The notes under the pieces are model-generated. The model ran no database searches. It was not told the origin of the DNA and was given only the letters and a program-made list of their open reading frames with translations. From Saccostrea echinata (Eukaryota), in contig NW_026889778.1 of the NCBI RefSeq assembly GCF_033153115.1, forward strand, positions 44,206,001 to 44,270,000: a DNA stretch of 64,000 nt, written 5' to 3'. The position numbers and the translations under genes were made by a program. Positions 14,401 through 43,225 of this stretch are shown here, in pieces; position 1 is the first letter of the stretch; every line of letters begins with the position of its first letter.

Positions 14401-15459
14401 TTTGTTTAGTGGGCTTTATCTAGCAAAAAAGTCTTTGTTTTTGTTTTCTTTAGGTTCACATTATTTGTTTTATAATTTACAATCCCAGTAGTTCGTTCAT
14501 TTTGGTTTCTTCATCAGTTTTTGTTTGGGGTGTTTAGCTTTAAGGTGGCAAAGACTATCCAGCTGGTGCATGGACTCTAGAGCTGCTACAGAGTCCGTGC
14601 CAGATATTCAGCTTTCCAGTATAGATCACATGGATACATCATTCAATAAATTTATATGTCAAAATCTTAATTGACATGGTCTAACTTGTCCTTGGTGAAC
14701 ATATGGACCCAGGGTTCACTGTGAACAATTTTTTTTTTAAATTTTGTATTTGTATTGACAATCAACAGACATGGTCATTACCACCAATAAATCTATAAAT
14801 TTGCAAGCAAGTGTAAGTCTTATAGTCTGAAGTATAAAGTTTGTCTTTGATAAACAATTTTAACCTGTCAGTAATTTTTTCCAGAAAATTAGCTAAAAAA
14901 TAACGTGTCTATATAACTGGCAAGAATAAAGTGAAATGGTCTTTTTTTTTCAAAATTAAGGAAAAGGTAATTCTAAAGAGTTGATAACATTTTATTGATG
15001 ATAAGTTATCAAATCAGTGCTAAATTGTATTTATTGCATTTATCACCATATTGTGATAAATGCTTTTAATACCAGTGCAAGAGCGATAACTCGTGCGTTC
15101 TTGGTAGTGGTTAAACATTATTGAGACCATGAGTTTTAAATAGAGGACGCAATATAATCAAGCACCTTATGACCCCGATTTTCATAGTCTACCGAAAAAG
15201 TTAGAAGGGCAAACATGTTGCAAAATTTCATCTCTAGTCTGCACACTTTGTCTGGAAAATGTTTTGACCCACCGTTCAGCAAAATTATTTCCATTTTTGT
15301 GCATTATTTTGTTCCAAGGATACGGTTTATAGACACTGTAAGTAATTTTTGCGAACAATAACATGATGCCCCTAGTTATAAAGGCTTGGATTTATAATCG
15401 TTGCACTTTGTGGTATCTGTGACTGTACATCATGCGGTGATGCTGAGGATAGAATGACA

Positions 15460-16030
15460 TTAAAAGTCCTTATTCTGGGGCATTCATTTATACGCAGATT
15501 TGAGAACTTTGTTTGTATCAACTAGTTCTGACCATCGGGTGACGCCGAATTTAAATCTTAATTCAGAGGAGCTACAGATTTTTTATTTAGGTTATGGGGG
15601 AGCGTCACTGGCTCAAATTCGCGCGAGGAACTCGTTACGTAAGAGACTTGCGTCCAGATGTTGTTTTGTTACAAGCTGTATCAAACGATTTGTGTCGGAG
15701 AAACACATCAGTGGAAGACATTTTTCATGAACTTGCGGACTTTGTAATTTATCTCCGTGATGCGGAAGATGTGGAAAAAAGTAGTGGTGCTTCAGACATT
15801 GCATAGAATTCCCCCGACAAGACGTATCAGGTTTCATTTGGACACAGAGTGCAAGAGAGTTGATGAATTAAATAGACGCATGTCCTATTACTTGCAGATT
15901 GTAGAGGGAGCAGCATTCTTTCACCATCTGGTTTATCATAGGTATTTCTGGCGGATGGGGTCCATTTAAATAATCAGGGAAATAAGGAATATTATAATAA
16001 TTTGAGAGCTGTTATTGTTTCCTTGATAAA
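15460..16030 (+). pseudogene. SGNH/GDSL-family hydrolase (frameshifted) inside the YR retrotransposon
   Basis: Block I KVLILGHSFIRRF, block III PDVVLLQAVSNDL and block V DGVHLNNQG occur in order across frameshifts. Confidence 0.8.
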
Positions 16031-16289
16031 GTCTATCAATAATGGTGGGTACATGTTTGTGCAGCATTTATATGTAGTCTAACGATACATTTTTCAATTT
16101 TCATCTGTTTATTTTCAAAATCCACATATGCAGTGGTGATTTAATGCAATTTAATATAATGATGCATATAGCCATATAAATATTATATCATTTAATTAAT
16201 ACATTTATGACACCCCCGTAAAGTTGGGGTTGTTTAATTGGATCCTGTGTATTATTTATTAACAGTTTATTTAAGACTAACCATAAATT

Positions 16290-16762
16290 TTAGTTTTAGC
16301 AGGATTTTACACCCCTATATGGTCGGGGTTTAGTTTTAGCAGAATCTTGCACCCCTATATGGTCGGGTTTGAATTATAGCAGGTTTTACACTCCTTTATG
16401 GTCGGGGTTTACTCGAGCAATATCCTGCAGCCCTATATGGTTGGGGTTGAATTTTAGCAGGATCCTGCACCCCTATATGGTCGGGTTTTACTTACGCGAT
16501 ATCCTACACCCCTATATGGTCGGGGTTTAATTTTAGCAGAATTTTGCATATGTATGGTTGAAGTTTACTTAAGCAGAATTTTGCACCCCTATATGGTCGG
16601 GGTTTAATTTTAGCAGGATTTTTCACCCCTACATGGTCGGGGTTGAATTCAAACAAGACGTTGCACCCCTATATGGTTGGGGTTGAATTCAGACAAGATG
16701 TTGTACCCCTATATGGTCGGGGTTTTATCTCAAAGGATTTATCCCCCTAAATATTGGGTTTG
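16290..16762. repeat. ~39-40-bp minisatellite, ~12 units, conserved hairpin core CACCCCTATATGGTCGGGGTT
   Basis: Cores at about 16310, 16350, 16389, 16428, 16468, 16507, 16547 (degenerate), 16584, 16624, 16664, 16704 and 16742 (degenerate), with more variable ~19-bp linkers. Confidence 0.92.
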
Positions 16763-17924
16763 TTTAACTGAATATATTGCATAAAATGAATAAGATACAT
16801 ATATTCCAATAGTGTTGAGATTTCTAGAGGTTTCTTATCTATAGAATTGTCAATGATGTAGATATTTTTGGAATTCTGCATATATAACCACCTCGCATTT
16901 ATACAGCAGAATTTAAAATATAAAAAGAAATGACATAATTTTAGACACAGTTATAATACACTCCATTGTCATTTATTCTTATCCGGTGAAGTATCATAAT
17001 TGCAAATAAATGTAGCTGTAAGGTTAGCTAGAATTATATTACCAATATGGATTAGGCATTAAATGATTTAGATTTCAGAAATATCCAATGATATTAAACT
17101 TCATAAAGTGTATATTTAATTAAGAATTAAGAAATTCTATTGGTGCCTTCATTGGTCTTTAAGAGCTCTGAAATATTTTTATTGATAATGTTATTACATA
17201 GTGTATATTACATAGATGATTTTTTATTTTTACAGGAAAATTGGGAGACACTATTTGTAAACATATGCTAGATATGTGGCACTAGGTTTGTGTTGAACGT
17301 GGAATATCTAATGACAAGACCGCGGAACTCTCATCAGGTTTGACTCTAAAGGATAGAATAGAGACAATTATATCTATGCTTATGTTTTACCTCAAGATAC
17401 ATTGACTGAGCTATGTAACAATCCCAGGATAGGTGTCTAGAATGCTAAACACAAATTAAGGTAAATAACTAAAAATAAAAGTAGATGAAGTTATGTAGCT
17501 GATTTTCGTAATCTTGAATATCCGCTCCCCAGGCAAGAAGGATAACTCTTTAAAAAAAAAGATCATTTAATCAAGAAAGACTCAAATTAAGCTTGAAATT
17601 CAATCTTTTCGTGCAACAATTTTTATTCACGCAACTCAAGTTCTTCGTAGTCTAGAAACTGGGAAAAGTTGACATTTGTGTCCCATAAGAGTATTTAAAA
17701 AATCTTTAGATAAATCGAATTTTCTTCAAGCTTGCTTTGCTAACCATGATATGAAATTTGAAGTGATATTTGATGTCTTCCAACGATAGCACATGCTTTT
17801 TACACTACAGGTATGTGTTATATAATGATTGAAAAAAAATATATAAGAAAAATACCATTATGATATGAGTATTAATAACATGCAATTTTTTCCAAATTCC
17901 GGGATACTTATAAATGTTTATTCA

Positions 17925-18130
17925 GGTACCTTTGGCTAACAACAGGATATTATTGCATTCTGACAAGCAATCGGTCGTGCAAAAAGTCAATTCTGCTAAA
18001 GTCAGACTATTGGTTAGAAACTTGTAGTTAATAACACTTATTTCACTATTATATTTAAGCAGAGTTCATTAGTTAGTTATTATATCAAATTAAATTGCAG
18101 ATTCTATTTTGCATTGACAGTGGCTTCATT
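17925..18130 (+). pseudogene. DIRS-type RNase H remnant
   Basis: Translates as LANNRILLHSDKQSVVQKVNS...LVRNL*LITL...IADS, resembling the DIRS RNase H (HxDN...ADxLS) region; it contains stops and frameshifts. Confidence 0.6.
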
Positions 18131-18261
18131 TTTGGGCAATATTGGAAACAATAAGTTTCAATAATTGATTCACACCTTTTCAACAATGTCACATTGGCAT
18201 CATTAAGCTAGATGGATGAACATATCCTTAACAATAGAGTCTGAACTTGGTACACCTAGCC

Positions 18262-18470
18262 ATGGCCAATATTTGGTACATTTCAATGGTAATCCCCTAA
18301 CTACTAACGTGTTATTAGTTATCAAACCCTAATTGCAATACTATTCATTTCTGTAACATAAACACATACTGTTTTAGATCACACTCTTTTCAGCAGCAGT
18401 ATTATAGGGCATTCCTGAACAAATTATTAAACAATTGGGCAGGTGGAATCCATAACAATATATGCCTCAA
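18262..18470 (+). pseudogene. Tyrosine recombinase C-terminal remnant
   Basis: GQYLVHFNGNPLT...FRSHSF...GIPEQIIKQLGRW, corresponding to the HSFR and LGRW catalytic boxes of DIRS YRs. Confidence 0.75.
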
Positions 18471-21400
18471 ACATTGGGGTGAGATTTGTATAATTAAAAT
18501 ATTATAGCTCAATTTCAATTTTGGCTTAGAAGTATTATACATCTATCCATTTTAGTTTTTGTAGATTGTGTGTAGTCTGGGATATGGCATTCATAGGATA
18601 CTGAGCTACCCAAAGTGACACCATTTGTCCTTGAGGAAAAAGCCCTCAATTTAAAAAAAAAATGGGTTTGGAGTCAGGGAAATTAGATTGAAGGAATTTA
18701 ACTCTTTGTTTTAGAATAAATTTAAATGCACTTGGGTGGTACATTAAGGTTTCAAGGACCTGGGCACCTCGCCTGGATCATTATTGTTTCATAGTATGGA
18801 ATGCTCCTGCTTGTGCAGCAAGTTATTAGTCCAAAGTATGTCAATTATTTGCTCTGATATAAGTTTAATCCAAGATGAGTCTTGATTTATTACATGGAAC
18901 AACTAACAAGTGTCTATTATACATGAACACTTATAAAATTTGAAATTTAAAGGTCAGGTGGGTGAAATGGAATGAATTAAAAACTAACATGTATACACCT
19001 AACACGTTAGTGGCGGGTGAACTTGTATAGACAAGTTCATTTGGCGGAATTTGGGGATTACCACGACTGAGGAATTCTCTCATGTCTGGCTCAAAACTCT
19101 GGGTAATCTATCCTCAGTACTGGGGAGGATTAATTTGGGGTTACCTCAGCGGTACCTGAGGGACCAGCTTGATCTTTGTGGGTACCAAAGGCAAGTTTTG
19201 GGGCCTACCCCTGGGGGTATTATCCCCATGTTGTTGTTGTATTCCAGGGGAGGCAGGTATAGAGTTAGGGCCTGAGTCAGAACTTGAATTCATTCATTTG
19301 ATGTGGCAATCACTCTTGTTGGTACCAAGAGGTCTGTTCCCACCACAGTCACCTGTGGGGGCGCTATCGCGCCAAGGATCTAGGGAGGTCATCCCGGTAG
19401 GCAGGCAGTGATTCATTGGGTTCCGTCGAGGTATTTACACCTATGTATATTAAATAGATTGTGACAAATAGTCGCCACAAAATGTAATAATTGTTTCACA
19501 ATAAATGTGTAAAATTAATATTTGTTACTATTCATTGCATCTGGGATTAATTGCATTTATCACCATATTGTGATAAATGCTTTTAATACCAGTGCAAGAG
19601 CGATAACTCGTGCGTTCTTGGTAGTGGTTAAACATTATTGAGACCATGAGTTTTAAATAGAGGACGCAATATAATCAAGCACCTTATGACCCCGATTTTC
19701 ATAGTCTACCGAAAAAGTTAGAAGGGCAAACATGTTGCAAAATTTCACCCACCCACTTTCCCTAAAATATGTGTACAGATTTTTGCTGCTTTCTCTTCTG
19801 TAATTTCAGTGACAGAAGCCTATTCTTACATGGAAAGAGATGTGTATGTGGAACACCCCAGCGGTTGGAATCATTAGCAAAGAAAGGATGTGGTCATTAT
19901 GTATATGGTGGGACCATTTGGTGTCAATTGGGCATTTTCTGTTGAAATCAATGTAAATGATTCAATCCTGAGTTTTATTGGACCTTTCTATGGTGTGATA
20001 CATAATCATTACTTCAGTGAAATTGGTGATCATTGATGATTATGTGTTTACATACAGTGTTACTGTACAGTGTTACTTTTAATAAGTATTGTAAGCAAGT
20101 ATAGCTTGTAAATATATATTGGGAATTTTCTAGCTTTGGGATTATGGTAAAGTTTCTTAAGTCACAATCTGGGATGGGGGCGGTGGAATTCGGGGATTAC
20201 CACGACTGAGGAATTCTCTCATGTCTGGCTCAAAACTCTGGGTAATCTATCCTCAGTACTGGGGAGGATTAATTTGGGGTTACCTCAGCGGTACCTGAGG
20301 GACCAGCTTGATCTTTGTGGGTACCAAAGGCAAGTTTTGGGGCCTACCCCTGGGGGTTTAATCCCCATGTTGTTGTTGTATTCCAGGGGAGGCAGGTATA
20401 GAGTTAGGGCCTGAGTCAGAACTTGAATTCATTCATTTGATGTGGCAATCACTCTTGTTGGTACCAAGAGGTCTGTTCCCACCACAGTCACCTGTGGGGG
20501 CGCTATCGCGCCAAGGATCTAGGGAGGTCATCCCGGTAGGCAGGCAGTGATTCATTGGGTTCCGTCGAGGTATTTACACCTATGTATATTACATAGATTG
20601 TGACAAATAGTCGCCACAAAATGTAATAATTGTTTCACAATAAATGTGTAAAATTAATATTTGTTACTATTCATTGCATCTGGGATTAATTGAGAATTGA
20701 ACATGAATTGATGGAATATCAATTTATAAATAGAAAACAATCCCAGCGTTTATTTCAAAAAAATACATTTAACACATTACATGTAGGAATTAATCGGTTT
20801 CTTTTTTAAAGATACATGTACACTTTTATAAAGTTATTGGAAAAAGATCACTTCTTAATACTGAAGCCAGGATGCAAATGGTTCGTAAAGAAATAAAACA
20901 AAATTTAGAATGAAAGACAAGTTAAATACAACATATGGATGATCTAGTTAATTGTCTACTCAAGGGTTTTTGTTGTTGTTGTTTTATATTATCGTCATAT
21001 AAATCTCAATTATCTACTTTATCCAAGTTGTCGTTTCTGTTGACACTTATATTAACTACTGCGAATCGTTGGCAGTAGAACAGTGTAGAATTAAGGAACA
21101 CAAAGAACAAATACAAAAAAAAAATTGTGTTCATTGACAAATTACATCGATTTACGTTTATTTTTTTCTTAAAATTACGGATTTTTTCCTGCACGTTTTT
21201 AAATAAAATAACATCCTGACCATTTCAAAATTTCTACAATTTGTCAATATGCGTTCTTGTAAACCAAGTGTAAATCTTATGAGCTCATGAAAATGAAGTG
21301 AACACTGTTCAAAAATGAAATGGCTTTAAATTCAACAAGTTTATTATTCACTTGCACGGGGGAAGATAAGAATATGCAATAAAAATATTTATGCTAAAAC

Positions 21401-23708: not shown

Positions 23709-25860
23709 ATGTCGATCACATCTCTTGTACACCGTAAGTAGTGAAATTTAAGATATATTTCTATATATCATGTGAATTTGAATTGCGTGGGATAAAAGTT
23801 CGGTCAATCAGGCAATCTGTTTAAGTATGACATTGGACGTTTAACATTATTAATATCATAGAAGGGAATCTTTCAATACGTCATTATTGTCTTAAAACCA
23901 TGTCAGAATCCTACTTTACGGAAACATTCTAATATTCAGCATTATTCTTGAGAGCTGTTGAAAACGCATCTAGAATCTTTAACTATTTAATAATGTCACT
24001 AGGTATCTAATCTCCTTTATAAAAAAAACTTACTTATAAATAATTTAAGCAAAGTCAACCACTTGAATCTATTTATAATTTTTTGTCAGTTGTTAAGGAA
24101 ACTTCCATGAATTTTTCATTTTGAAATTGAAATGAATATTGGTAATTTTTTTAAAAAAATCTTCGAATTTTGAAATTTCTGGGACACTGGTGGAAATATC
24201 ATCTTATCTATTTTCTACAGATATTCTGTCGGCGATTATATTTGTAATCTTCATCGTTTGTAACGCTGACTCTCAAAACGAAACAAGGTAATGAATGTTT
24301 CAACTATCTATAATCTCCTTTTTTTTTAATCCTGCAATGGTTGTAAAGTATTCTCCTATATAAAATAAGTTTTTGTCTTTTTCTATTCTTATATTGACGA
24401 AATACCTTTTGTTGTGTATTCATGTACCATATTAATAATAAGTTTGATTTGTTGAATTGCAGTTGCTTTTCCTTCTTTTATACTGATGAAAAAAGTCCAG
24501 CAAATTTGGAGAAGACCTGTTTTGAAATGACAAGTAGCAGTGTAAACAAATGGTACCAAGGTATTGTTGCTTAGACATTTAATTGCTGGATTGGGGGAAA
24601 TGTGGGAAAGGGAGAAAAGTTTTGAATTTCAATCGACAAACACAATGAATATTTCTGCATCTACTATTGAATTCTTTTACCAGGTGTATCTATGTATATA
24701 ATGCGTATTAACAATGAAAAGCCTTCTTCGTGTTCTTTTGGGGACATCAAACTGGAAACCATACAAAAATACATTATAGAAGAAGGAACCCGTCAACGAA
24801 GATTGTGTAGGACAAAGATGATTTTCTCCGTCAATACGACCACATGTGAAGACGAGATTAAATATCTTGATTTCTATTGTATTGGAAACGTTCAAAGATC
24901 AAAGAGCCTATTTTTCCAAGGTAAGACATAATTGGAATCCAAGGAGAAATTCTTAATATTTTTTTTACAAATAAATATACCCAGACATTTACGTTAGAGA
25001 ATGAAATGTACTGATTACCTTTATTTTCAGATTGTGCTTCTGCAAACTGTCCTAGAGAAATGGATGAGAGTAGAGAACACCGAAGTGGTAAAAAAAATAC
25101 TCACAGTTGAAATTTTATATCAATTTATTAATTTAAAATTGTAAGGATCTTTAACATGTTTTCATCAAAATACAGAGGCTCTGGTACTGTCTCAATTCCC
25201 TGAACCGACGGTTTCTCAGTCTGGATTATTTGCTTATGATATACCAGCGTCACATTGTGACATGAAGCAGTGTAGACTAGAGAACTGTTCTACTGAACAA
25301 CTGAAAAAATTTAAGGAGAGTACTGTAGGTAAGTAAGCTTAATGCGATTTTCAAGCCCAGTCGGATGTTATCTTGCACGTTTATTTCCCCCATAGTGTAG
25401 TTGTGGCTGTATCAGTGAATGTTTTTGGATTATATGAAAATGTTTAGCTATTTATGGTAATTGATGTTCTTTTGTCACGTTTTATTTAATACTTGATGCT
25501 TATTCCTCCATAATACGTGATCCCGCTTCTAGTGTTTTTAGAGCCCCGTGTTTGTTCTGTTCCTATTTTGTATTGTTCTTAAAATAGAATTGCAAAATTA
25601 CACAGAAAGCAAGGCGAACCCAACTAAAGACCAGAACAAGGAGTGTTTGCTTTTTACAATTGGAAGTGGAGGTGGTGGTCTTCTAGTCGGAATTTTATCA
25701 ACATCTGTCACGTGTTTTCTTCTTAATAAATATAAGAAAAATTACAGGTTTGTATATTTTAATTACTTGCTTAAATCGATAATATTTATTGTATGTATGA
25801 AGAACTCTATCGATAGCTGCATGAGGTACCTACTTTCGGAGATCTAATTTGTACAAATGT

Positions 25861-25936
<76 letters not shown>

Positions 25937-38644: not shown

Positions 38645-41324
38645 ATGAAATTGCTTGATGTGTTCACCGGCATACACATTATAAATCTTGTCAGTTATGT
38701 AACTGTATGGAAACAGGAGAAAAGATATTTTTCTGAACAACATTTTTCTAAATTTTTGTGAAAAAAGTGAGAATTTCCGTAATTAAAATTCTTTTTATGA
38801 AAGATTTGTTTTTGGATAATTTTGCCAGATTTTTTTTATCTCAAAAAATTGTATGTTTAAAACAACACGTAAATTAATGTCTAAGATATTAACTTAATTG
38901 TTTGAAACGTTAAATTGCTTTTTTTCCCACTTTCAGATGTTTTGTGTTTACACAAAGGAAAACATATTACGAACCCGAGACTTGTTCCACCATAGACAGC
39001 ATCATCATCAACATGATGTTTACCGGTATATATGCCCAGAAAACAAAAGTTATTTGATCTACCTGTCTGTCTACATCCATACAACTTAAGGGATCCTGAG
39101 TCGACGCATTGCCGTTGGATCCCTGACAAATTTCATTCGATATTCTACGTGCTTTTGCAGCGATATCTTTCAGGGAAAGTAAAACTCTGAATTGTTTTCT
39201 CATCTCTCGACCATTCACGTGAATCCTTTCGCTGATAAACCACCTGTAGCATGTGCATTGATGTGTCAACTGCTTTCTTCATGTTTACCTTTTATATCAA
39301 CTGATAAAAGCCCTGATCTGATTTATGCTTCAAAATAAGAGAAGCAAGCTCGTAGAATATCAAATGAAATTTGTCAGGGGTCCAACGGCAGCGTGTTTAC
39401 TCAGGATGTCTGACGTTGTGAGGATGGTTTTCTCTATCTACAATATTAATATTGCCCTTGGCAGTGGAAGTACTTTACTAATGTCATGCATAATAATGGT
39501 TTGTTGAAGTCAAGAGGTAGATAATTTTCTGATATGACTTCTACATGTAACCAATGTCATTTGAAAGGAGTCAAGGTCACGGGAATTATATGGAAGCAAG
39601 AAACGCGCAAGGGGCCAAAAACTTTGTATCGTAGAAATCTAAAATTATTGTCCTTGCCTCAATGGTAGCTTGTGACTAGAAATCATAAGTGTTGGAAAAT
39701 ATCATAATGTTTACAGTAAATTGTAGAGCTACAAGTGTACTTATGTGCACAGGATTTACAACAAATCTACGTAAATGATGGGCTTTGAAGGTCGAAGAAT
39801 TGACAACGTAGAGGTTACACGATTGCTGCCAGGGTTAGAATAGATCTAGTCTGGTCAAGTTTGTATGCATTATAACTGTCGGGGATATTTCAAGTTCACA
39901 AACACATCTTAACTACATATGTTTTCATTATTGATGATTTTGTTATGAAATTTAAAGGTAGAGGAAATAAAGCTTTCATAGCCATCTTTATTATTGTTAA
40001 TTTACTGGATATTTTTATTCTAGGTATTGCTATTGAAGCTAGTGCAATTTCTGGTAAAAATCAATGCTTAATTGATGAGTTTGCTGCGAACGTCGGGGTT
40101 TTTCAAATCGCAAGATATGTGATACTTGATAAGCAACATAGAAAACTTTGTCCTTTGCGGATGGATCTCTTTCTGATAGACTCATCAGATGAACAAAAAT
40201 GTAATTTATGGAATCTGTGCAATAGACAAGTTATCTCAATATATTTTCAAGGTAACATATAAATCAGTTACAAGTTTCAATTGCTGTACATGTCAATATT
40301 TCTGTCTCAATCATATCTAAATAATGTTCTAGATGGAAGATATCACCATTCTCTCATAGTTTAATTATAATACACCGTTAAAATGTACTAAAATACTAAT
40401 CTTGTAAATAAAGTTGATTTATACATCTATCTAATATAAAGCGTTTAAAAAGCTGACATATTTGCATGAAAAGCATAAATATTGAATCCGACGGAAGAAG
40501 AAGCTATAAAACAAAACAAAAAGCCCATCTTTCAAGGTTATAGCAGAACTTTTTTTTTCAATTGTCAGAAAACATATTTTTATTTCTTCTAAATAAATCA
40601 TTTCTATTTCCCATCTGCGATGACAAAATACCACTCAGTATCTCGTTCGGACGACTTAGTGTCTTGTACGTACATGTATAAAATAGCAAAAAAAATGTTT
40701 GGCAGCAATACATGCACCAAGGCGAGACAGAATTTCTTTAGTTTTTACAAATCACGGAAAAACATTAATTCATAGCGTCAATCTCGACATGGAAAATTCT
40801 TTTTAAATGAATATGTACAAAAGATATTTTGACAATTCCTACAGAAAAAAAAGTTATTGAACACTTGCTACTTTCAAAAATTTGGAACTGTACAGATCAA
40901 TTAGGAAGTTCACCTGAGCACACCCGGTTAATACTCCTATATACGCAAATAATATGACTTTCAACGACTCAAACATATAGTTAAATTATAAACAAATCGC
41001 GTTTGCATGGATATCTAGGGATTACAATATTGTGTAAGTCAGAGGTCTATCATTACATTGTGATATTCAGTGACCTTTGAGATATTGTCAGAATCCTAAC
41101 TATTTGTTTAATTAACCCTATTTTGAAGAATTCGAAAGTTAAATATCAAATAAAAAAGTAAAAATGTGTAAATTTTGGGAAACTTCCTGTTCATTTCTTT
41201 TTGAAAATAATAAACTGTAAGTACGTTATTTAAATATATTAAATAACTTACAGTTTAATATTTCTAACAAAAAAATGAACAGAAGGTTTCCCAAAACATA
41301 TATATGTTGAAGAAAAATGTACGA

Positions 41325-41358
<34 letters not shown>

Positions 41359-43225
41359 TAAGAATGTTTACTAAAATATGCAATTTGTTTAGGATGTGAA
41401 GTAACAATGTGTTCTTCTTCTAACAAATATAATGGTAAGTCAGTAAAAAAAAACATTAGTAATTCATTGCAATCAATAATGTACAATATACGAGTGCATA
41501 AAGTTTTCGGAAGATTTCGGAAATGAAGATGATTAAATTTACTACTCAAGCCATTTTCATAAGATGCTTTATCAAATGATTGCCAATGTGAAAAACCTAC
41601 GCGACGTCCCCCGCGAACTTTTCATATTAATGTTTGGGTTTTTTTTATTCAAATGAACATAAATTGAAAATACGTAAACTGCTTATTTCTTTTTTTGTCT
41701 GGAACGTATTTGGTAAAATAGCATTTTTTCTATGTGGACTAGGAATTGTCATGTTTCTGTGACGTCTGAATTGTAACGGAATATATTTTTATGATCACTA
41801 TTCCTTGCATGTTCAGCTTTATGTGACATTCAGGCATATTTTGAAAAAAAAAAACTGCTTATCTTTTCAGACTCGGACAGGATTACAATAACGGATTTTT
41901 CAAAAGCAACTACCTTGAAAAAGAAATGGAACTTTTTTAACATACCTACTGCTCAATGTAATTTCAAACAAACGTGTAATTACAACAAAAATAATAACTG
42001 CGAAGAAAAAAGGTCAAATGATACCAGTTATATCCTTACAGAAGGTATTCAAGATTTACTCTTGATTTGATCGTAATATTCACGTGTAAATCTCTAATTT
42101 TGTCTTCATCCTTCCATCCTAGAAATGTCATTAAATATATCATTATAATGATTCAAATTCTAGTATTTCTATAATTATGATGGATTTGCATTAAAGCATT
42201 TAATAACAATACAAATAGTCAGGTGCATGCTTTGCATGATTTCTTAAGATATCTGCAGAGTACTCTATTGTTTGCCGTTTGCATCACGGACTGCATATAC
42301 TGTCATTGAAGACTATTTTTATTCGTTATTAAACGTTACAAGTTGAAACTCAATTGCAGGAAATGTATCACATATATTTACTGCAGCGAATATCGGAGGT
42401 TCCCTTACTGGTTTTGTTACTGGGGTGATTCTCGCGTCACTGTCGTGCCTTATCTTTCAACAATGCAGGTTCATATATTTTATAAAATATAACATTAAAA
42501 ATAAATGGAAAAAAGTGTGGTTNNNNNNNNNNNNNNNNNNNNNNNNNNNNNNNNNNNNNNNNNNNNNNNNNNNNNNNNNNNNNNNNNNNNNNNNNNNNNN
42601 NNNNNNNNNNNNNNNNNNNNNNNNNNNNNNNNNNNNNNNNNNNNNNNNNNNNNNNNNNNNNNNNNNTACAGTATGTACATGTATAAAAAGGATTACAGAA
42701 TTACATCTTAATGGTCAAATATTAAATATGTTTTTGTCATTTTAAGCAAGCTTAATTATAAAATCACTTGACACTATTTTTAAGAATGGAAATCAAACGT
42801 TTTGAAAAATCTTTTTTTTTAAATGATTGTTGCACTTATTGTGTGATTTGCTTTCAATGTTTTTCAGTTTCATAATACATGTACGTATGTTTGCATTTCA
42901 AAATGAATAGGAAAACAAAACTCAAAGCTCGCATAATTGCTCCCTGGGTGCTAGGAAAGAACTTGGATCTCCCCTTGAGAATAATAAATTTTTCCCAAAA
43001 GAACATAAAGCGACTGAAAATCGCTTGTTTGAAGTGACGTCATCAGATTCTGAGAAAATATATGAAGACTGCATTTCCAGAAGGGGTCTTCATAATAAAA
43101 ATAACTTTAGTCAAAACATTCGATGTTCAAGTGTTTCCAGTTCAGATGAAGAATGTTCTAAAATGATTGAAACTGATGCAGCTTATCTGGAAGTTATTTG
43201 TAATGACTACATTTATGTCGAGTAA
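38645..43225 (+). CDS. Paralog of gene 1: Cys-rich type I membrane protein (gene 2; splicing of the first and last coding exons ambiguous, possibly a pseudogene)
   Basis: Exons 38645-(38724 or 38757), 38937-39025, 40024-40251, 41393-41434, 41871-42044, 42360-42468 and about 42911-43225. Same intron phases and Cys pattern as gene 1 (CFVF..ETC; RYVI..RKLC..RM..YFQ; CxxxxC; IP...C..KQ.C...NC). TM IGGSLTGFVTGVILASLSCLIF. Confidence 0.78.
39076..39428. mobile_element. MITE with ~75-bp imperfect TIRs in a gene 2 intron
   Basis: tgccgttggatccctgacaaatttcattcgatattctacg is inverted as cgtagaatatcaaatgaaatttgtcaggggtccaacggca. Confidence 0.75.

What the first reader, a model, noticed from the sequence alone, without database searches (positions are those of the whole stretch)
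23709..43225. Tandem pair of orphan Cys-rich receptor-like genes: candidate undescribed bivalve immunoreceptor family
Seen: two multi-exon genes share intron phases (2,1,1,1,1,2) around the ectodomain and TM exons and an identical 2+4+2+3 distribution of 11 ectodomain Cys, despite low residue identity. Examples: CFSF..KTC vs CFVF..ETC; IQKYII..RRLC..KM..FFQ vs IARYVI..RKLC..RM..YFQ; IPASHCDMKQC..NC vs IPTAQCNFKQTC..NC. Each has an N-terminal hydrophobic leader, N-glycosylation sequons and one TM helix. I cannot match the ectodomain to Ig, C-type lectin, EGF, TNFR, SRCR or LRR patterns. The ORF track shows only fragments, so this pair is easy to miss. Inference: a fast-evolving, tandemly expanded cell-surface receptor family with a possibly new disulfide-bonded fold.
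Basis: partly seen in the sequence, partly recalled or inferred. Interest (0 to 1): 0.85.

Follow-up and report, generated by a model that had tools for sequence, protein, structure and literature searches.

The report
Oyster-only receptor gene family cluster
The two genes are real, related members of a 14-copy tandem family found only in oysters. The family encodes single-pass membrane (and probably secreted) glycoproteins with an unnamed cysteine-rich outer domain and, in about half the copies, a tyrosine-motif signalling tail. No function is known.

Summary
Gene 1 (23709-27842) is an intact 9-exon gene of 513 codons. Gene 2 (38937 to at least 42468) has the same five ectodomain and TM exons, the same intron phases (2,1,1,1,1,2) and the same 2+4+2+3 pattern of 11 cysteines.

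Pairwise BLASTP finds no similarity between the two. A profile built only from other oyster species hits gene 2's exons as the best non-self matches in the window (E 4.7e-6 and 0.0036).

It is not an orphan pair. The genome holds 14 copies, all on one strand within 0.95 Mb. RefSeq lists relatives in Saccostrea, Ostrea and Crassostrea, all as "uncharacterized protein". There is no Pfam match, no PDB sequence match and no paper.

AlphaFold models of two relatives give a confident β-α-β-β-α-β (ferredoxin-like, SEA-like) ectodomain. That is a common arrangement, not a new fold, and no specific structural relative stands out (best Z 6).

The tail carries four tyrosines that are invariant across three genera, three of them as YHx[IL]. 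Gene 1 has an ITSM-like TVYHDI. About half the copies lack the TM and tail exons.

Both assembly gaps lie outside the modelled exons. Gene 2's 5' and 3' ends are unresolved. RNA evidence could not be obtained, so immune function is untested. This scan found other oyster-only receptor families earlier, on other DNA.

The parts
23709..23733 (+). Gene 1 exon 1: ATG plus 8 codons (MSITSLVH), donor C|GTAAGT, phase 1
   Evidence: With the next exon it gives an N-terminus that parallels the RefSeq S. cucullata model P0001 (MSSLINVHHVL..C.AD).
24221..24287 (+). Gene 1 leader exon: hydrophobic signal-peptide core ILSAIIFVIFIVCNADSQNET, donor phase 2
   Evidence: Conserved in paralogs L016-18, L022 and L023.
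24463..24560 (+). Gene 1 exon E2: CFSF...KTCFE, 2 Cys, phase 2 in and phase 1 out
   Evidence: Conserved in 11 of 12 paralog loci. Other-species profile E 2.2e-13.
24684..24920 (+). Gene 1 exon E3: IQKYII..RRLCRTKM..FFQ, 4 Cys; the core of the predicted alpha+beta domain
   Evidence: 13-14 copies in the genome. Other-species profile E 2e-25.
25031..25087 (+). Gene 1 exon E3b: DCASANCPREMDESREHRS, a C-x4-C mini-exon, phase 1/1
   Evidence: The same mini-exon is present in public relatives.
25176..25328 (+). Gene 1 exon E4: EALVLSQFPEPT..IPASHCDMKQC..NCS, 3 Cys. A stop follows the donor within 2 codons if the intron is retained.
   Evidence: Conserved in 12 of 12 paralog loci.
25606..25747 (+). 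Gene 1 TM exon: juxtamembrane Cys, Gly-rich TM helix IGSGGGGLLVGILSTSVTCFLL, then NKYKKNY; donor phase 2
26038..26158 (+). Gene 1 cytoplasmic exon C1: ..ERKLSIHSKEGETVYHDISDIP (ITSM-like TxYxxI)
   Evidence: 7 copies in the genome. The motif is invariant across three genera.
27201..27842 (+). Gene 1 last exon C2: 213-aa tail, low-confidence in the models, with EQRYSESPKSS, FYHTL, YSVYESPV, GVYHAL and EYYVIM; ends in the stop codon
38937..39025 (+). Gene 2 exon E2 candidate: (R)CFVF..ETC.., 2 Cys. Acceptor sits directly before the Cys codon (phase 2); donor is phase 1.
   Evidence: Profile support is weak (E 0.47, but at the correct profile positions 33-67). There is no hit with the paralog-only E2 HMM.
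40024..40251 (+). Gene 2 exon E3: IARYVI..RKLC..YFQ, 4 Cys
   Evidence: E 0.018 and 4.7e-6. An in-frame upstream ATG at 39945 followed by a hydrophobic stretch is an alternative start.
41393..41434 (+). Gene 2 mini-exon E3b candidate: (G)CEVTMCSSSNKYN, C-x4-C, donor GTAAGT
   Evidence: Chosen by phase, motif and donor. An alternative acceptor lies at 41363.
41871..42044 (+). Gene 2 exon E4: ..NIPTAQCNFKQTC..NNC.., 3 Cys
   Evidence: E 9.7e-7 and 0.0036.
42360..42468 (+). Gene 2 TM exon: IGGSLTGFVTGVILASLSCLIF. The donor TGCAG|GTTCAT (phase 2) is at the family's position.
   Evidence: E 0.11, the top non-self hit.
42523..42666 (.). Assembly gap inside the intron after gene 2's TM exon. It may hide a C1-type exon.
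42955..43225 (+). Gene 2 putative last exon (open frame 42911-43222 plus stop). It contains KIYEDC, AAYLEV and DYIYVE. The acceptor is unresolved and homology to the family tail is not shown.
   Evidence: (E 3.3).
36391..36572 (.). Assembly gap between gene 1 and gene 2's first supported exon, in no modelled exon

Best explanation
Both genes belong to an unnamed gene family seen only in oysters, arrayed in tandem. There are 14 copies on the + strand of G000 contig C29, between 43.45 and 44.40 Mb.

The full-length form, which gene 1 has, is a type I membrane glycoprotein made of these parts:
- a signal peptide;
- one compact, disulfide-stapled alpha+beta domain, predicted as beta-alpha-beta-beta-alpha-beta (ferredoxin-like/SEA-like), encoded by exons E2-E3;
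- a Cys-containing stalk, encoded by E3b-E4;
- a glycine-rich TM helix;
- a cytoplasmic tail of about 250 aa, low-confidence in the models. Its only strongly conserved islands are tyrosine motifs: ExxYHDI (ITSM-like TVYHDI in gene 1), RYSESPKSS, QxYHxL and PxxYHxLQ. Saccostrea and Ostrea also have YESPV and YYVI.

Inferred mechanism: an unknown ligand binds the ectodomain. The tail tyrosines are then phosphorylated and recruit SH2-domain effectors, which could be phosphatase, kinase or adaptor. The copies that stop after E4 would act as soluble binders or decoys.

Gene 2 is a divergent member. It keeps the ectodomain and TM architecture but has a different or unresolved tail.

Shown: homology, exon structure, copy number, restriction to oysters, coding constraint, absence of any named domain, and motif conservation.

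Inferred: the fold (from models only), membrane topology, signalling, and any role in immunity.
For: Family and cluster:
- The E3 exon of gene 1 hits 13 places, and the profile hits 14. All are on C29, on the + strand.
- Exon borders are conserved across 12 paralog loci.

Gene 2 membership:
- Profile E-values are 9.7e-7, 0.018 and 0.11, and 4.7e-6 and 0.0036 from a profile built only from other species.
- Intron phases and Cys counts are identical to gene 1.

Public relatives:
- Only 22 clusters match among 1.84 billion representative proteins.
- All labelled ones are from Saccostrea cucullata, Ostrea edulis, Crassostrea gigas or C. virginica, named 'uncharacterized protein', with no Pfam domain.
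- RefSeq models have the same exon junctions and N-terminus as gene 1.

Coding constraint: ectodomain dN/dS has a median of 0.35 over 45 pairs.

Fold:
- AF2 on P0008 gives pLDDT 80-93 over residues 41-150 of the ectodomain (60-66 from there to about 180).
- AF2 on P0002 gives the same topology with pLDDT 73-94 over residues 1-100.
- The best structural matches are generic ferredoxin-like domains (Z up to 6.0). Among them are the extracellular SEA domains of MUC16, Gpr126 and TMPRSS6, dystroglycan and the TROP2 C-domain, at Z 4.1-5.2.

Tail:
- Four tyrosines are invariant across three genera, within 48 invariant columns of 280.
- Seven C1 exons are present in the genome.

Ecto-only copies:
- L016-L018 have no TM or tail exon within 6 kb, and there is none in window 1-23 kb.
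- Relatives of 211-233 aa that end after E4 exist in Crassostrea and Saccostrea.
Against: - There is no RNA evidence for these two loci.
- The fold is a prediction from a shallow, single-family alignment (71-84 rows, many of them exon fragments).
- The E3b/E4 stalk has lower confidence.
- No canonical ITIM or ITAM is present. O. edulis has PVYHDI, not TxYxxI.
- Nothing links the family to hemocytes or infection.
- Gene 2 lacks a located leader and a family-type tail, so it may be a pseudogene or incompletely assembled.
Confidence: 0.85

Rival explanations
1. The family is real but is not an immune receptor. It could be an adhesion, developmental, gamete-recognition or epithelial barrier protein, in the manner of SEA-domain mucins or EpCAM/TROP2, and the tail tyrosines would serve endocytic sorting (YxxPhi) rather than SH2 signalling.
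For: - YHxL and YHDI also fit the YxxPhi sorting consensus.
- The weak structural neighbours include the TROP2 C-domain, dystroglycan and mucin SEA domains.
- There are no expression data.
- dN/dS of 0.35 is not the signature of an arms race.
Against: - A tandem array of 14 divergent copies, with membrane and soluble forms and with tail loss or swapping, is typical of multigene immune-type receptor clusters.
- Four invariant tyrosines embedded in longer conserved acidic or serine contexts across three genera go beyond a simple sorting signal.
Confidence: 0.3
2. The ectodomain is a highly diverged SEA domain, so it is a member of a known superfamily rather than a new domain family.
For: - The predicted topology is beta-alpha-beta-beta-alpha-beta, and the domain sits near the membrane in a type I glycoprotein.
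- SEA domains of MUC16 (Z 4.3 and 4.1), Gpr126 (Z 4.6) and TMPRSS6 (Z 4.3) appear among the matches.
Against: - These scores tie with ribosomal protein S6, ACT and Cas6 domains, and all are below Z 8.
- Foldseek finds nothing at E<=1e-3.
- Pfam SEA gives no hit even at E<=10.
- There is no G-S-V-V-V-type cleavage motif.
- The family's invariant cysteines have no detected counterpart: neither Pfam SEA nor any solved structure aligns with the family by sequence.
Confidence: 0.15
3. Gene 2 is a decaying or incompletely assembled copy (a pseudogene) rather than a functional paralog.
For: - No leader exon was located.
- There is no family-type C1 or C2 exon.
- The tail acceptor is weak.
- An assembly gap lies right after the TM exon.
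- It is the most divergent copy (26% identity in E3).
- It has no close paralog in the genome.
Against: - All five modelled exons are open.
- Splice sites are canonical and phases are kept.
- All 11 cysteines are retained. That is unexpected for a copy drifting neutrally to 26% identity.
Confidence: 0.3
4. The similarity between the two genes is chance, produced by reading ORF fragments selectively.
For: BLASTP finds no pairwise alignment. An unbiased tblastn of region against region shows only E 0.067.
Against: - Independent profiles place gene 2's exons as the top non-self hits, in the right order and on the right strand.
- Intron phases and positions match.
- 12 other paralogs bridge the two genes.
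Confidence: 0.01

Closest known systems
RefSeq 'uncharacterized protein' models of oysters, e.g. Ostrea edulis XP_056000835.1 (LOC125654064, 492 aa), Saccostrea cucullata XP_062596606.1, Crassostrea virginica LOC111110035, C. gigas XP_034306501.1
   Same: True homologs. They have the same exon junctions, Cys pattern, Gly-rich TM and conserved tail motifs. Gene 1 is 65-71% identical to the S. cucullata copies.
   Different: None has a name, a Pfam domain or a paper. Crassostrea members keep only 7 of the 11 cysteines. The 1165-aa S. cucullata model fuses two full copies and part of a third.
SEA domain and other extracellular ferredoxin-like domains (MUC16 SEA, Gpr126/ADGRG6 SEA, TMPRSS6 SEA, dystroglycan, TROP2/EpCAM C-domain)
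   Same: The predicted alpha+beta sandwich has beta-alpha-beta-beta-alpha-beta order and sits in the ectodomain of a single-pass glycoprotein. Z is 4.1-5.2.
   Different: There is no sequence or profile similarity, no autoproteolysis motif, and 7-11 conserved cysteines. The match strength is no better than to ribosomal S6 or ACT domains.
Vertebrate ITIM/ITSM-bearing immunoreceptor clusters (SLAM family, PD-1, LILR/KIR-type multigene families; background knowledge)
   Same: Type I topology. Tandem multigene array with divergent ectodomains. Membrane and soluble or tail-less members. A TxYxxI motif in gene 1, plus further conserved YxxL motifs.
   Different: The ectodomain is not Ig-like. There is no canonical ITIM or ITAM spacing. 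The TM has no charged residue for adaptor pairing. Phosphorylation and SH2 binding are untested.
Other oyster-only single-pass receptor families noted by this scan in the same genome (CUB-like ectodomain with tyrosine-motif tails; 10-Cys ectodomain with ankyrin tail)
   Same: The same general design and the same restriction to oysters (these are AI notes and were not checked here).
   Different: They lie on other contigs and have other ectodomain folds. The C1 tail exon of this family occurs only in this cluster.

Membership tests
Unnamed oyster family (XP_056000835.1-like) | Significant match of the E3/E4 ectodomain exons to the family profile | tested here: met
   Gene 1: 2e-25, 4e-17 and 2e-13. 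Gene 2: 4.7e-6 and 0.0036, using a profile from other species only.
Unnamed oyster family (XP_056000835.1-like) | Conserved exon structure, with phases 2,1,1,1,1,2 from leader to TM | tested here: met
   for both genes.
Unnamed oyster family (XP_056000835.1-like) | Cysteine framework 2+4+2+3 (Saccostrea/Ostrea type) | tested here: met
   In gene 2 two of the positions are shifted by a few residues.
Unnamed oyster family (XP_056000835.1-like) | Family-type cytoplasmic exons (ERKxSIHSKExExxYHDI; EQRYSESPKSS) | tested here: met
   Gene 1 has them. Gene 2 does not: it has no C1 hit, and its tail scores E 3.3. 7 of the 14 copies have C1.
SEA domain (Pfam PF01390) | Sequence or profile match to SEA | tested here: not met
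   There is no Pfam hit at E<=10 for the exons or for full-length relatives.
SEA domain (Pfam PF01390) | Ferredoxin-like alpha/beta sandwich superposable on solved SEA domains | tested here: inconclusive
   Z is 4.1-4.6 to the MUC16, Gpr126 and TMPRSS6 SEA domains. This ties with many unrelated ferredoxin-like folds.
SEA domain (Pfam PF01390) | G|S-V-V-V-type autoproteolysis motif (not universal) | tested here: not met
   A regex over the exons and six relatives found none.
ITIM/ITSM immunoreceptors | ITSM TxYxx[VI] in the cytoplasmic tail | tested here: met
   Gene 1 has ETVYHDI. C. virginica has ETTYHDI, ETFYHDI and ETIYHDI. O. edulis has EPVYHDI, with P at position -2.
ITIM/ITSM immunoreceptors | ITIM [SIVL]xYxx[IVL], or ITAM YxxL-x6-12-YxxL | tested here: not met
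   None of the gene 1 tail tyrosines has S, I, V or L at position -2. The YxxL motifs are more than 60 residues apart.
ITIM/ITSM immunoreceptors | Tyrosine phosphorylation and SH2-effector recruitment; immune-cell expression | not testable with these tools
Biochemistry would be needed.
Ig, C-type lectin, EGF, TNFR, SRCR, LRR, CUB ectodomains | Pfam or PDB sequence match, or an all-beta or repeat fold | tested here: not met
   Pfam gives none. The PDB profile search gives none. The models are alpha+beta.

The most novel reading that the evidence does not exclude
The cluster encodes a previously undescribed, oyster-specific immunoreceptor system. It would be built on a new extracellular domain family: a disulfide-stapled, ferredoxin-like module unrelated by sequence to SEA. 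Membrane members would signal through conserved ITSM-like/YHxL phosphotyrosine motifs, and tail-less secreted members would act as decoys or opsonins. This would be an independent invention of the paired or soluble multigene receptor logic known from vertebrate Ig-type clusters.
Probability: 0.3. Interest if true: 0.7.

Novelty: new variant of a known kind. Interest (0 to 1): 0.5.

Why it matters
Oysters have no adaptive immunity and rely on expanded, lineage-specific receptor repertoires. Most of these sit in databases as 'uncharacterized proteins'.

This work defines one such family. It sets out the exon structure, cysteine framework, predicted fold, conserved signalling motifs, membrane and soluble forms, copy number and location. 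That gives clear handles for expression, ligand and SH2-binding experiments.

It also corrects public annotation: one RefSeq model fuses two full tandem genes and part of a third. If the immune reading holds, the family adds a non-Ig ectodomain to the known solutions for tyrosine-motif immunoreceptors. If it does not, this is still a new extracellular domain family for Pfam.

Tried and rejected
- Region-against-region tblastn and pairwise BLASTP found no similarity between the two genes. Profiles were needed.
- One search was a mistyped reference.
- One search used an out-of-frame query for exon C1 by my error. One search repeated it in frame, and only one search is used.
- The search for gene 2's leader exon, by hydrophobicity plus donor phase, gave only a weak candidate near 38209-38246. 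I do not claim it.
- The acceptor of gene 2's tail is unresolved.
- A minus-strand profile hit at 55851-55964 is a poly-lysine artefact.
- Pfam, the PDB sequence profile, the ESM Atlas, Foldseek against PDB and Foldseek against viral structures gave no significant match.
- Paper searches for 12 LOC identifiers and for oyster ITIM/ITSM receptors found nothing on this family.
- The joined (spliced) protein models of genes 1 and 2 were never assembled for any search or fold. All searches used single exons by reference, or public proteins.
- One script printed long translations because a motif look-up failed. Nothing from that output was used.


Full report
**Setting**

The window is G000:C29:44206001-44270000 of a 923-Mb, 425-contig assembly with about 32% GC. 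I did not verify that. The closest public proteins are from S. cucullata, at 65-71% identity, which fits a congener.

**Gaps first**

N runs lie at 36391-36572 and 42523-42666.
- The first gap is upstream of the first supported exon of gene 2 (38937).
- The second begins 55 nt after the donor of gene 2's TM exon (42468|GT), so it is in an intron.
- No exon in my models is read across a gap. The bacterial-style ORFs that cross them are artefacts.
- In gene 1 the next exon (C1, 121 nt) lies 290 nt after the TM exon. An equivalent exon of gene 2 could therefore be hidden in the second gap.
- I did not try to fill either gap.

**Gene 1**

I compared 9.5-kb stretches around 12 paralogs and read the splice sites. 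This gives nine exons:

| Exon | Coordinates | Content |
|---|---|---|
| exon 1 | 23709-23733 | ATG, MSITSLVH |
| leader | 24221-24287 | hydrophobic signal-peptide core |
| E2 | 24463-24560 | 2 Cys |
| E3 | 24684-24920 | 4 Cys |
| E3b | 25031-25087 | 2 Cys |
| E4 | 25176-25328 | 3 Cys |
| TM | 25606-25747 | TM helix |
| C1 | 26038-26158 | cytoplasmic, TVYHDI |
| C2 | 27201-27842 | tail, stop |

- All exons have AG/GT borders and open frames. The lengths sum to 1542 nt, or 513 codons.
Exon 1 plus the leader exon give MSITSLVH-H-ILSAIIFVIFIVCNAD. This parallels the N-terminus of the RefSeq S. cucullata model (MSSLINVHHVLMATFHLLFLICAAD).
- I checked phases arithmetically and exon by exon.

**Gene 2**

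Five exons have the family's acceptor and donor positions and phases:

| Exon | Coordinates | Content |
|---|---|---|
| E2 | 38937-39025 | (R)CFVF..ETC |
| E3 | 40024-40251 | IARYVI..RKLC..YFQ |
| E3b | 41393-41434 | GCEVTMC.. |
| E4 | 41871-42044 | IPTAQCNFKQTC..NNC |
| TM | 42360-42468 | IGGSLTGFVTGVILASLSCLIF |

- Cysteines number 2+4+2+3.
- The leader exon was not found. An in-frame ATG at 39945, followed by a hydrophobic stretch running into E3, is an alternative start.
- The terminal ORF ending at 43225 has only weak phase-compatible acceptors and is not detectably related to the family tail (E 3.3).

**Is the resemblance more than chance?**

- Pairwise methods fail. tblastn of region against region gives E 0.067 for one exon. 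BLASTP gives nothing. Smith-Waterman against shuffles gives p 0.0065, 0.02 and 0.55.
- The family bridges the two genes. HMMs built from the paralogs without gene 2, searched against all 4001 six-frame pieces of the window, rank gene 2's exons as the top non-self hits: E4 9.7e-7, E3 0.018, TM 0.11.
- An HMM built only from proteins of other oyster species gives E3 4.7e-6, E4 0.0036 and E2 0.47 at the right profile positions.
- The hits are collinear and on the same strand, and intron phases are identical. Homology is secure.

**Not a pair**

- The E3 exon of gene 1 has 13 matches, and the E3 profile has 14. All lie on C29 between 43.45 and 44.40 Mb, on the + strand.
- One copy ends about 0.5 kb before the window starts (L017).
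- Only 7 copies have the C1 cytoplasmic exon.
- The three copies closest to gene 1 (L016-L018, up to 94% identical in E3) have leader and E2-E4 exons. They have no TM, C1 or C2 exon within 6 kb, and none is present in window 1-23 kb.
- In every copy a stop follows the E4 donor within a few codons, so ending after E4 gives a secreted protein. Public relatives of 211-233 aa have just that form.

**Public relatives**

- An E3 profile search of 1.84 billion representative proteins found 22 clusters.
- Every cluster with a label is an oyster: S. cucullata, O. edulis, C. gigas or C. virginica. All are named 'uncharacterized protein LOC...' and have no Pfam domain.
- The rest are unlabelled single-exon fragments from Logan, ENA or JGI contigs.
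- The O. edulis protein XP_056000835.1 (P0008, 492 aa) has every module of gene 1, joined at the same places.
- The 1165-aa S. cucullata model is a fusion of two full tandem copies and part of a third.
- No paper mentions 12 of the LOC identifiers.

**Selection**

Nei-Gojobori dN/dS was summed over exons E2, E3 and E4. The median is 0.35 over 45 paralog pairs, with 0.6-0.7 for some younger pairs and 1.3 for the youngest (L022-L023, few changes). The exons are therefore under coding constraint. The data do not show pervasive positive selection.

**Domain identity**

- Pfam gives nothing for any exon or for seven full-length relatives.
- A profile search of all PDB sequences gives nothing.
- The ESM Atlas gives nothing.
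- AlphaFold2 with the family alignment gives two concordant models.
  - P0008: ectodomain pLDDT is 80-93 over residues 41-150, 60-66 from there to about 180, and below 50 beyond.
  - P0002: pLDDT is 73-94 over residues 1-100 and lower over the E3b/E4 stalk.
  - Both show beta-alpha-beta-beta-alpha-beta plus one or two extra strands.
- Foldseek finds no PDB or viral match at E<=1e-3.
- The exhaustive aligner gives at best Z 6.0, to ribosomal protein S6, ACT, MORF and Cas6 domains, all ferredoxin-like.
- Extracellular ferredoxin-like modules score Z 4.1-5.2: dystroglycan, Gpr126 SEA, MUC16 SEA, TMPRSS6 SEA, the TROP2 C-domain and SorCS2.
- By the tool's own calibration, Z below 8 means only a common arrangement.
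- The predicted fold is therefore not new. The sequence family is unplaced, and SEA membership fails on sequence and motif.

**Cysteines**

- Saccostrea and Ostrea members have 11.
- All Crassostrea members examined lack the same four: the first of E2, the second of E3b and the last two of E4.
- This suggests two dispensable disulfides and a conserved core around the four E3 cysteines.

**Tail**

- I aligned eight full-length tails from three genera. Of 280 columns, 48 are invariant, and they cluster in ERKxSIHSKE..YHDI, EQRYSESPKSS, YHxL and YHxLQ. Four tyrosines are invariant.
- Gene 1 has ETVYHDI (TxYxxI, ITSM-like), FYHTL, YSVYESPV, GVYHAL and EYYVIM.
- There is no canonical ITIM and no ITAM spacing.
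- The TM helix is glycine-rich (GSGGGGLLVGIL) and has no charged residue.
- Reading these motifs as phosphotyrosine docking sites is inference from the general behaviour of such motifs. A sorting role (YxxPhi) is the main alternative.

**Verdict**

- The interpretation needs widening: a 14-copy, oyster-wide family that is already in RefSeq but unnamed.
- It also needs tempering: a common predicted fold, moderate constraint, and an untested immune role.
- This scan had earlier noted other oyster-only single-pass receptor families on other contigs of this genome. This family is distinct from them in predicted ectodomain fold, and its C1 tail exon occurs only in this cluster.

Noticed in passing
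G000:C29:44204650-44205544 (L017:2650-3544), just upstream of window base 1; window 1-23000: A third family member, 93% identical to gene 1 in E3, ends about 0.5 kb before the window starts. No TM or tail exon of the family follows it anywhere in window 1-23 kb, so it is probably an ecto-only (secreted or truncated) copy.
   Followed up: partly
window 25329-25335 and the same position in all paralog loci: A stop codon follows the E4 donor within 1-10 codons in every copy. Retaining that intron would give a secreted protein of about 215 aa, like the 211-233-aa public relatives. This may be a built-in switch between membrane and soluble forms.
   Followed up: partly
P0001 (S. cucullata XP_062596606.1, 1165 aa): This RefSeq model strings together two complete family members and part of a third. 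It is probably an annotation fusion of tandem genes.
   Followed up: partly
Crassostrea relatives P0015, P0021, P0026-29, P0038-39: All Crassostrea members lack the same 4 of the 11 ectodomain cysteines. This looks like a lineage-wide loss of two putative disulfides.
   Followed up: partly
window 25848-25976 and 35353-35663: Long (GA/CT)n and (CA/GT)n microsatellites. The first lies in gene 1's intron between the TM and C1 exons. They produce spurious LSLSLS/ERERER ORFs and spurious similarity between the two regions.
   Followed up: yes
window 55770-55964 (-): A poly-lysine ORF piece gives a false weak hit (E 0.036) to the family profile.
   Followed up: yes
window 39945-40023: An in-frame ATG, followed by a 25-residue hydrophobic stretch, runs directly into gene 2's E3 exon. 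It could give an alternative, E2-less start for gene 2.
   Followed up: no
window 15033-20692: Another first-reader note places a tyrosine-recombinase retrotransposon here, between the upstream paralog and gene 1. I did not examine it.
   Followed up: no
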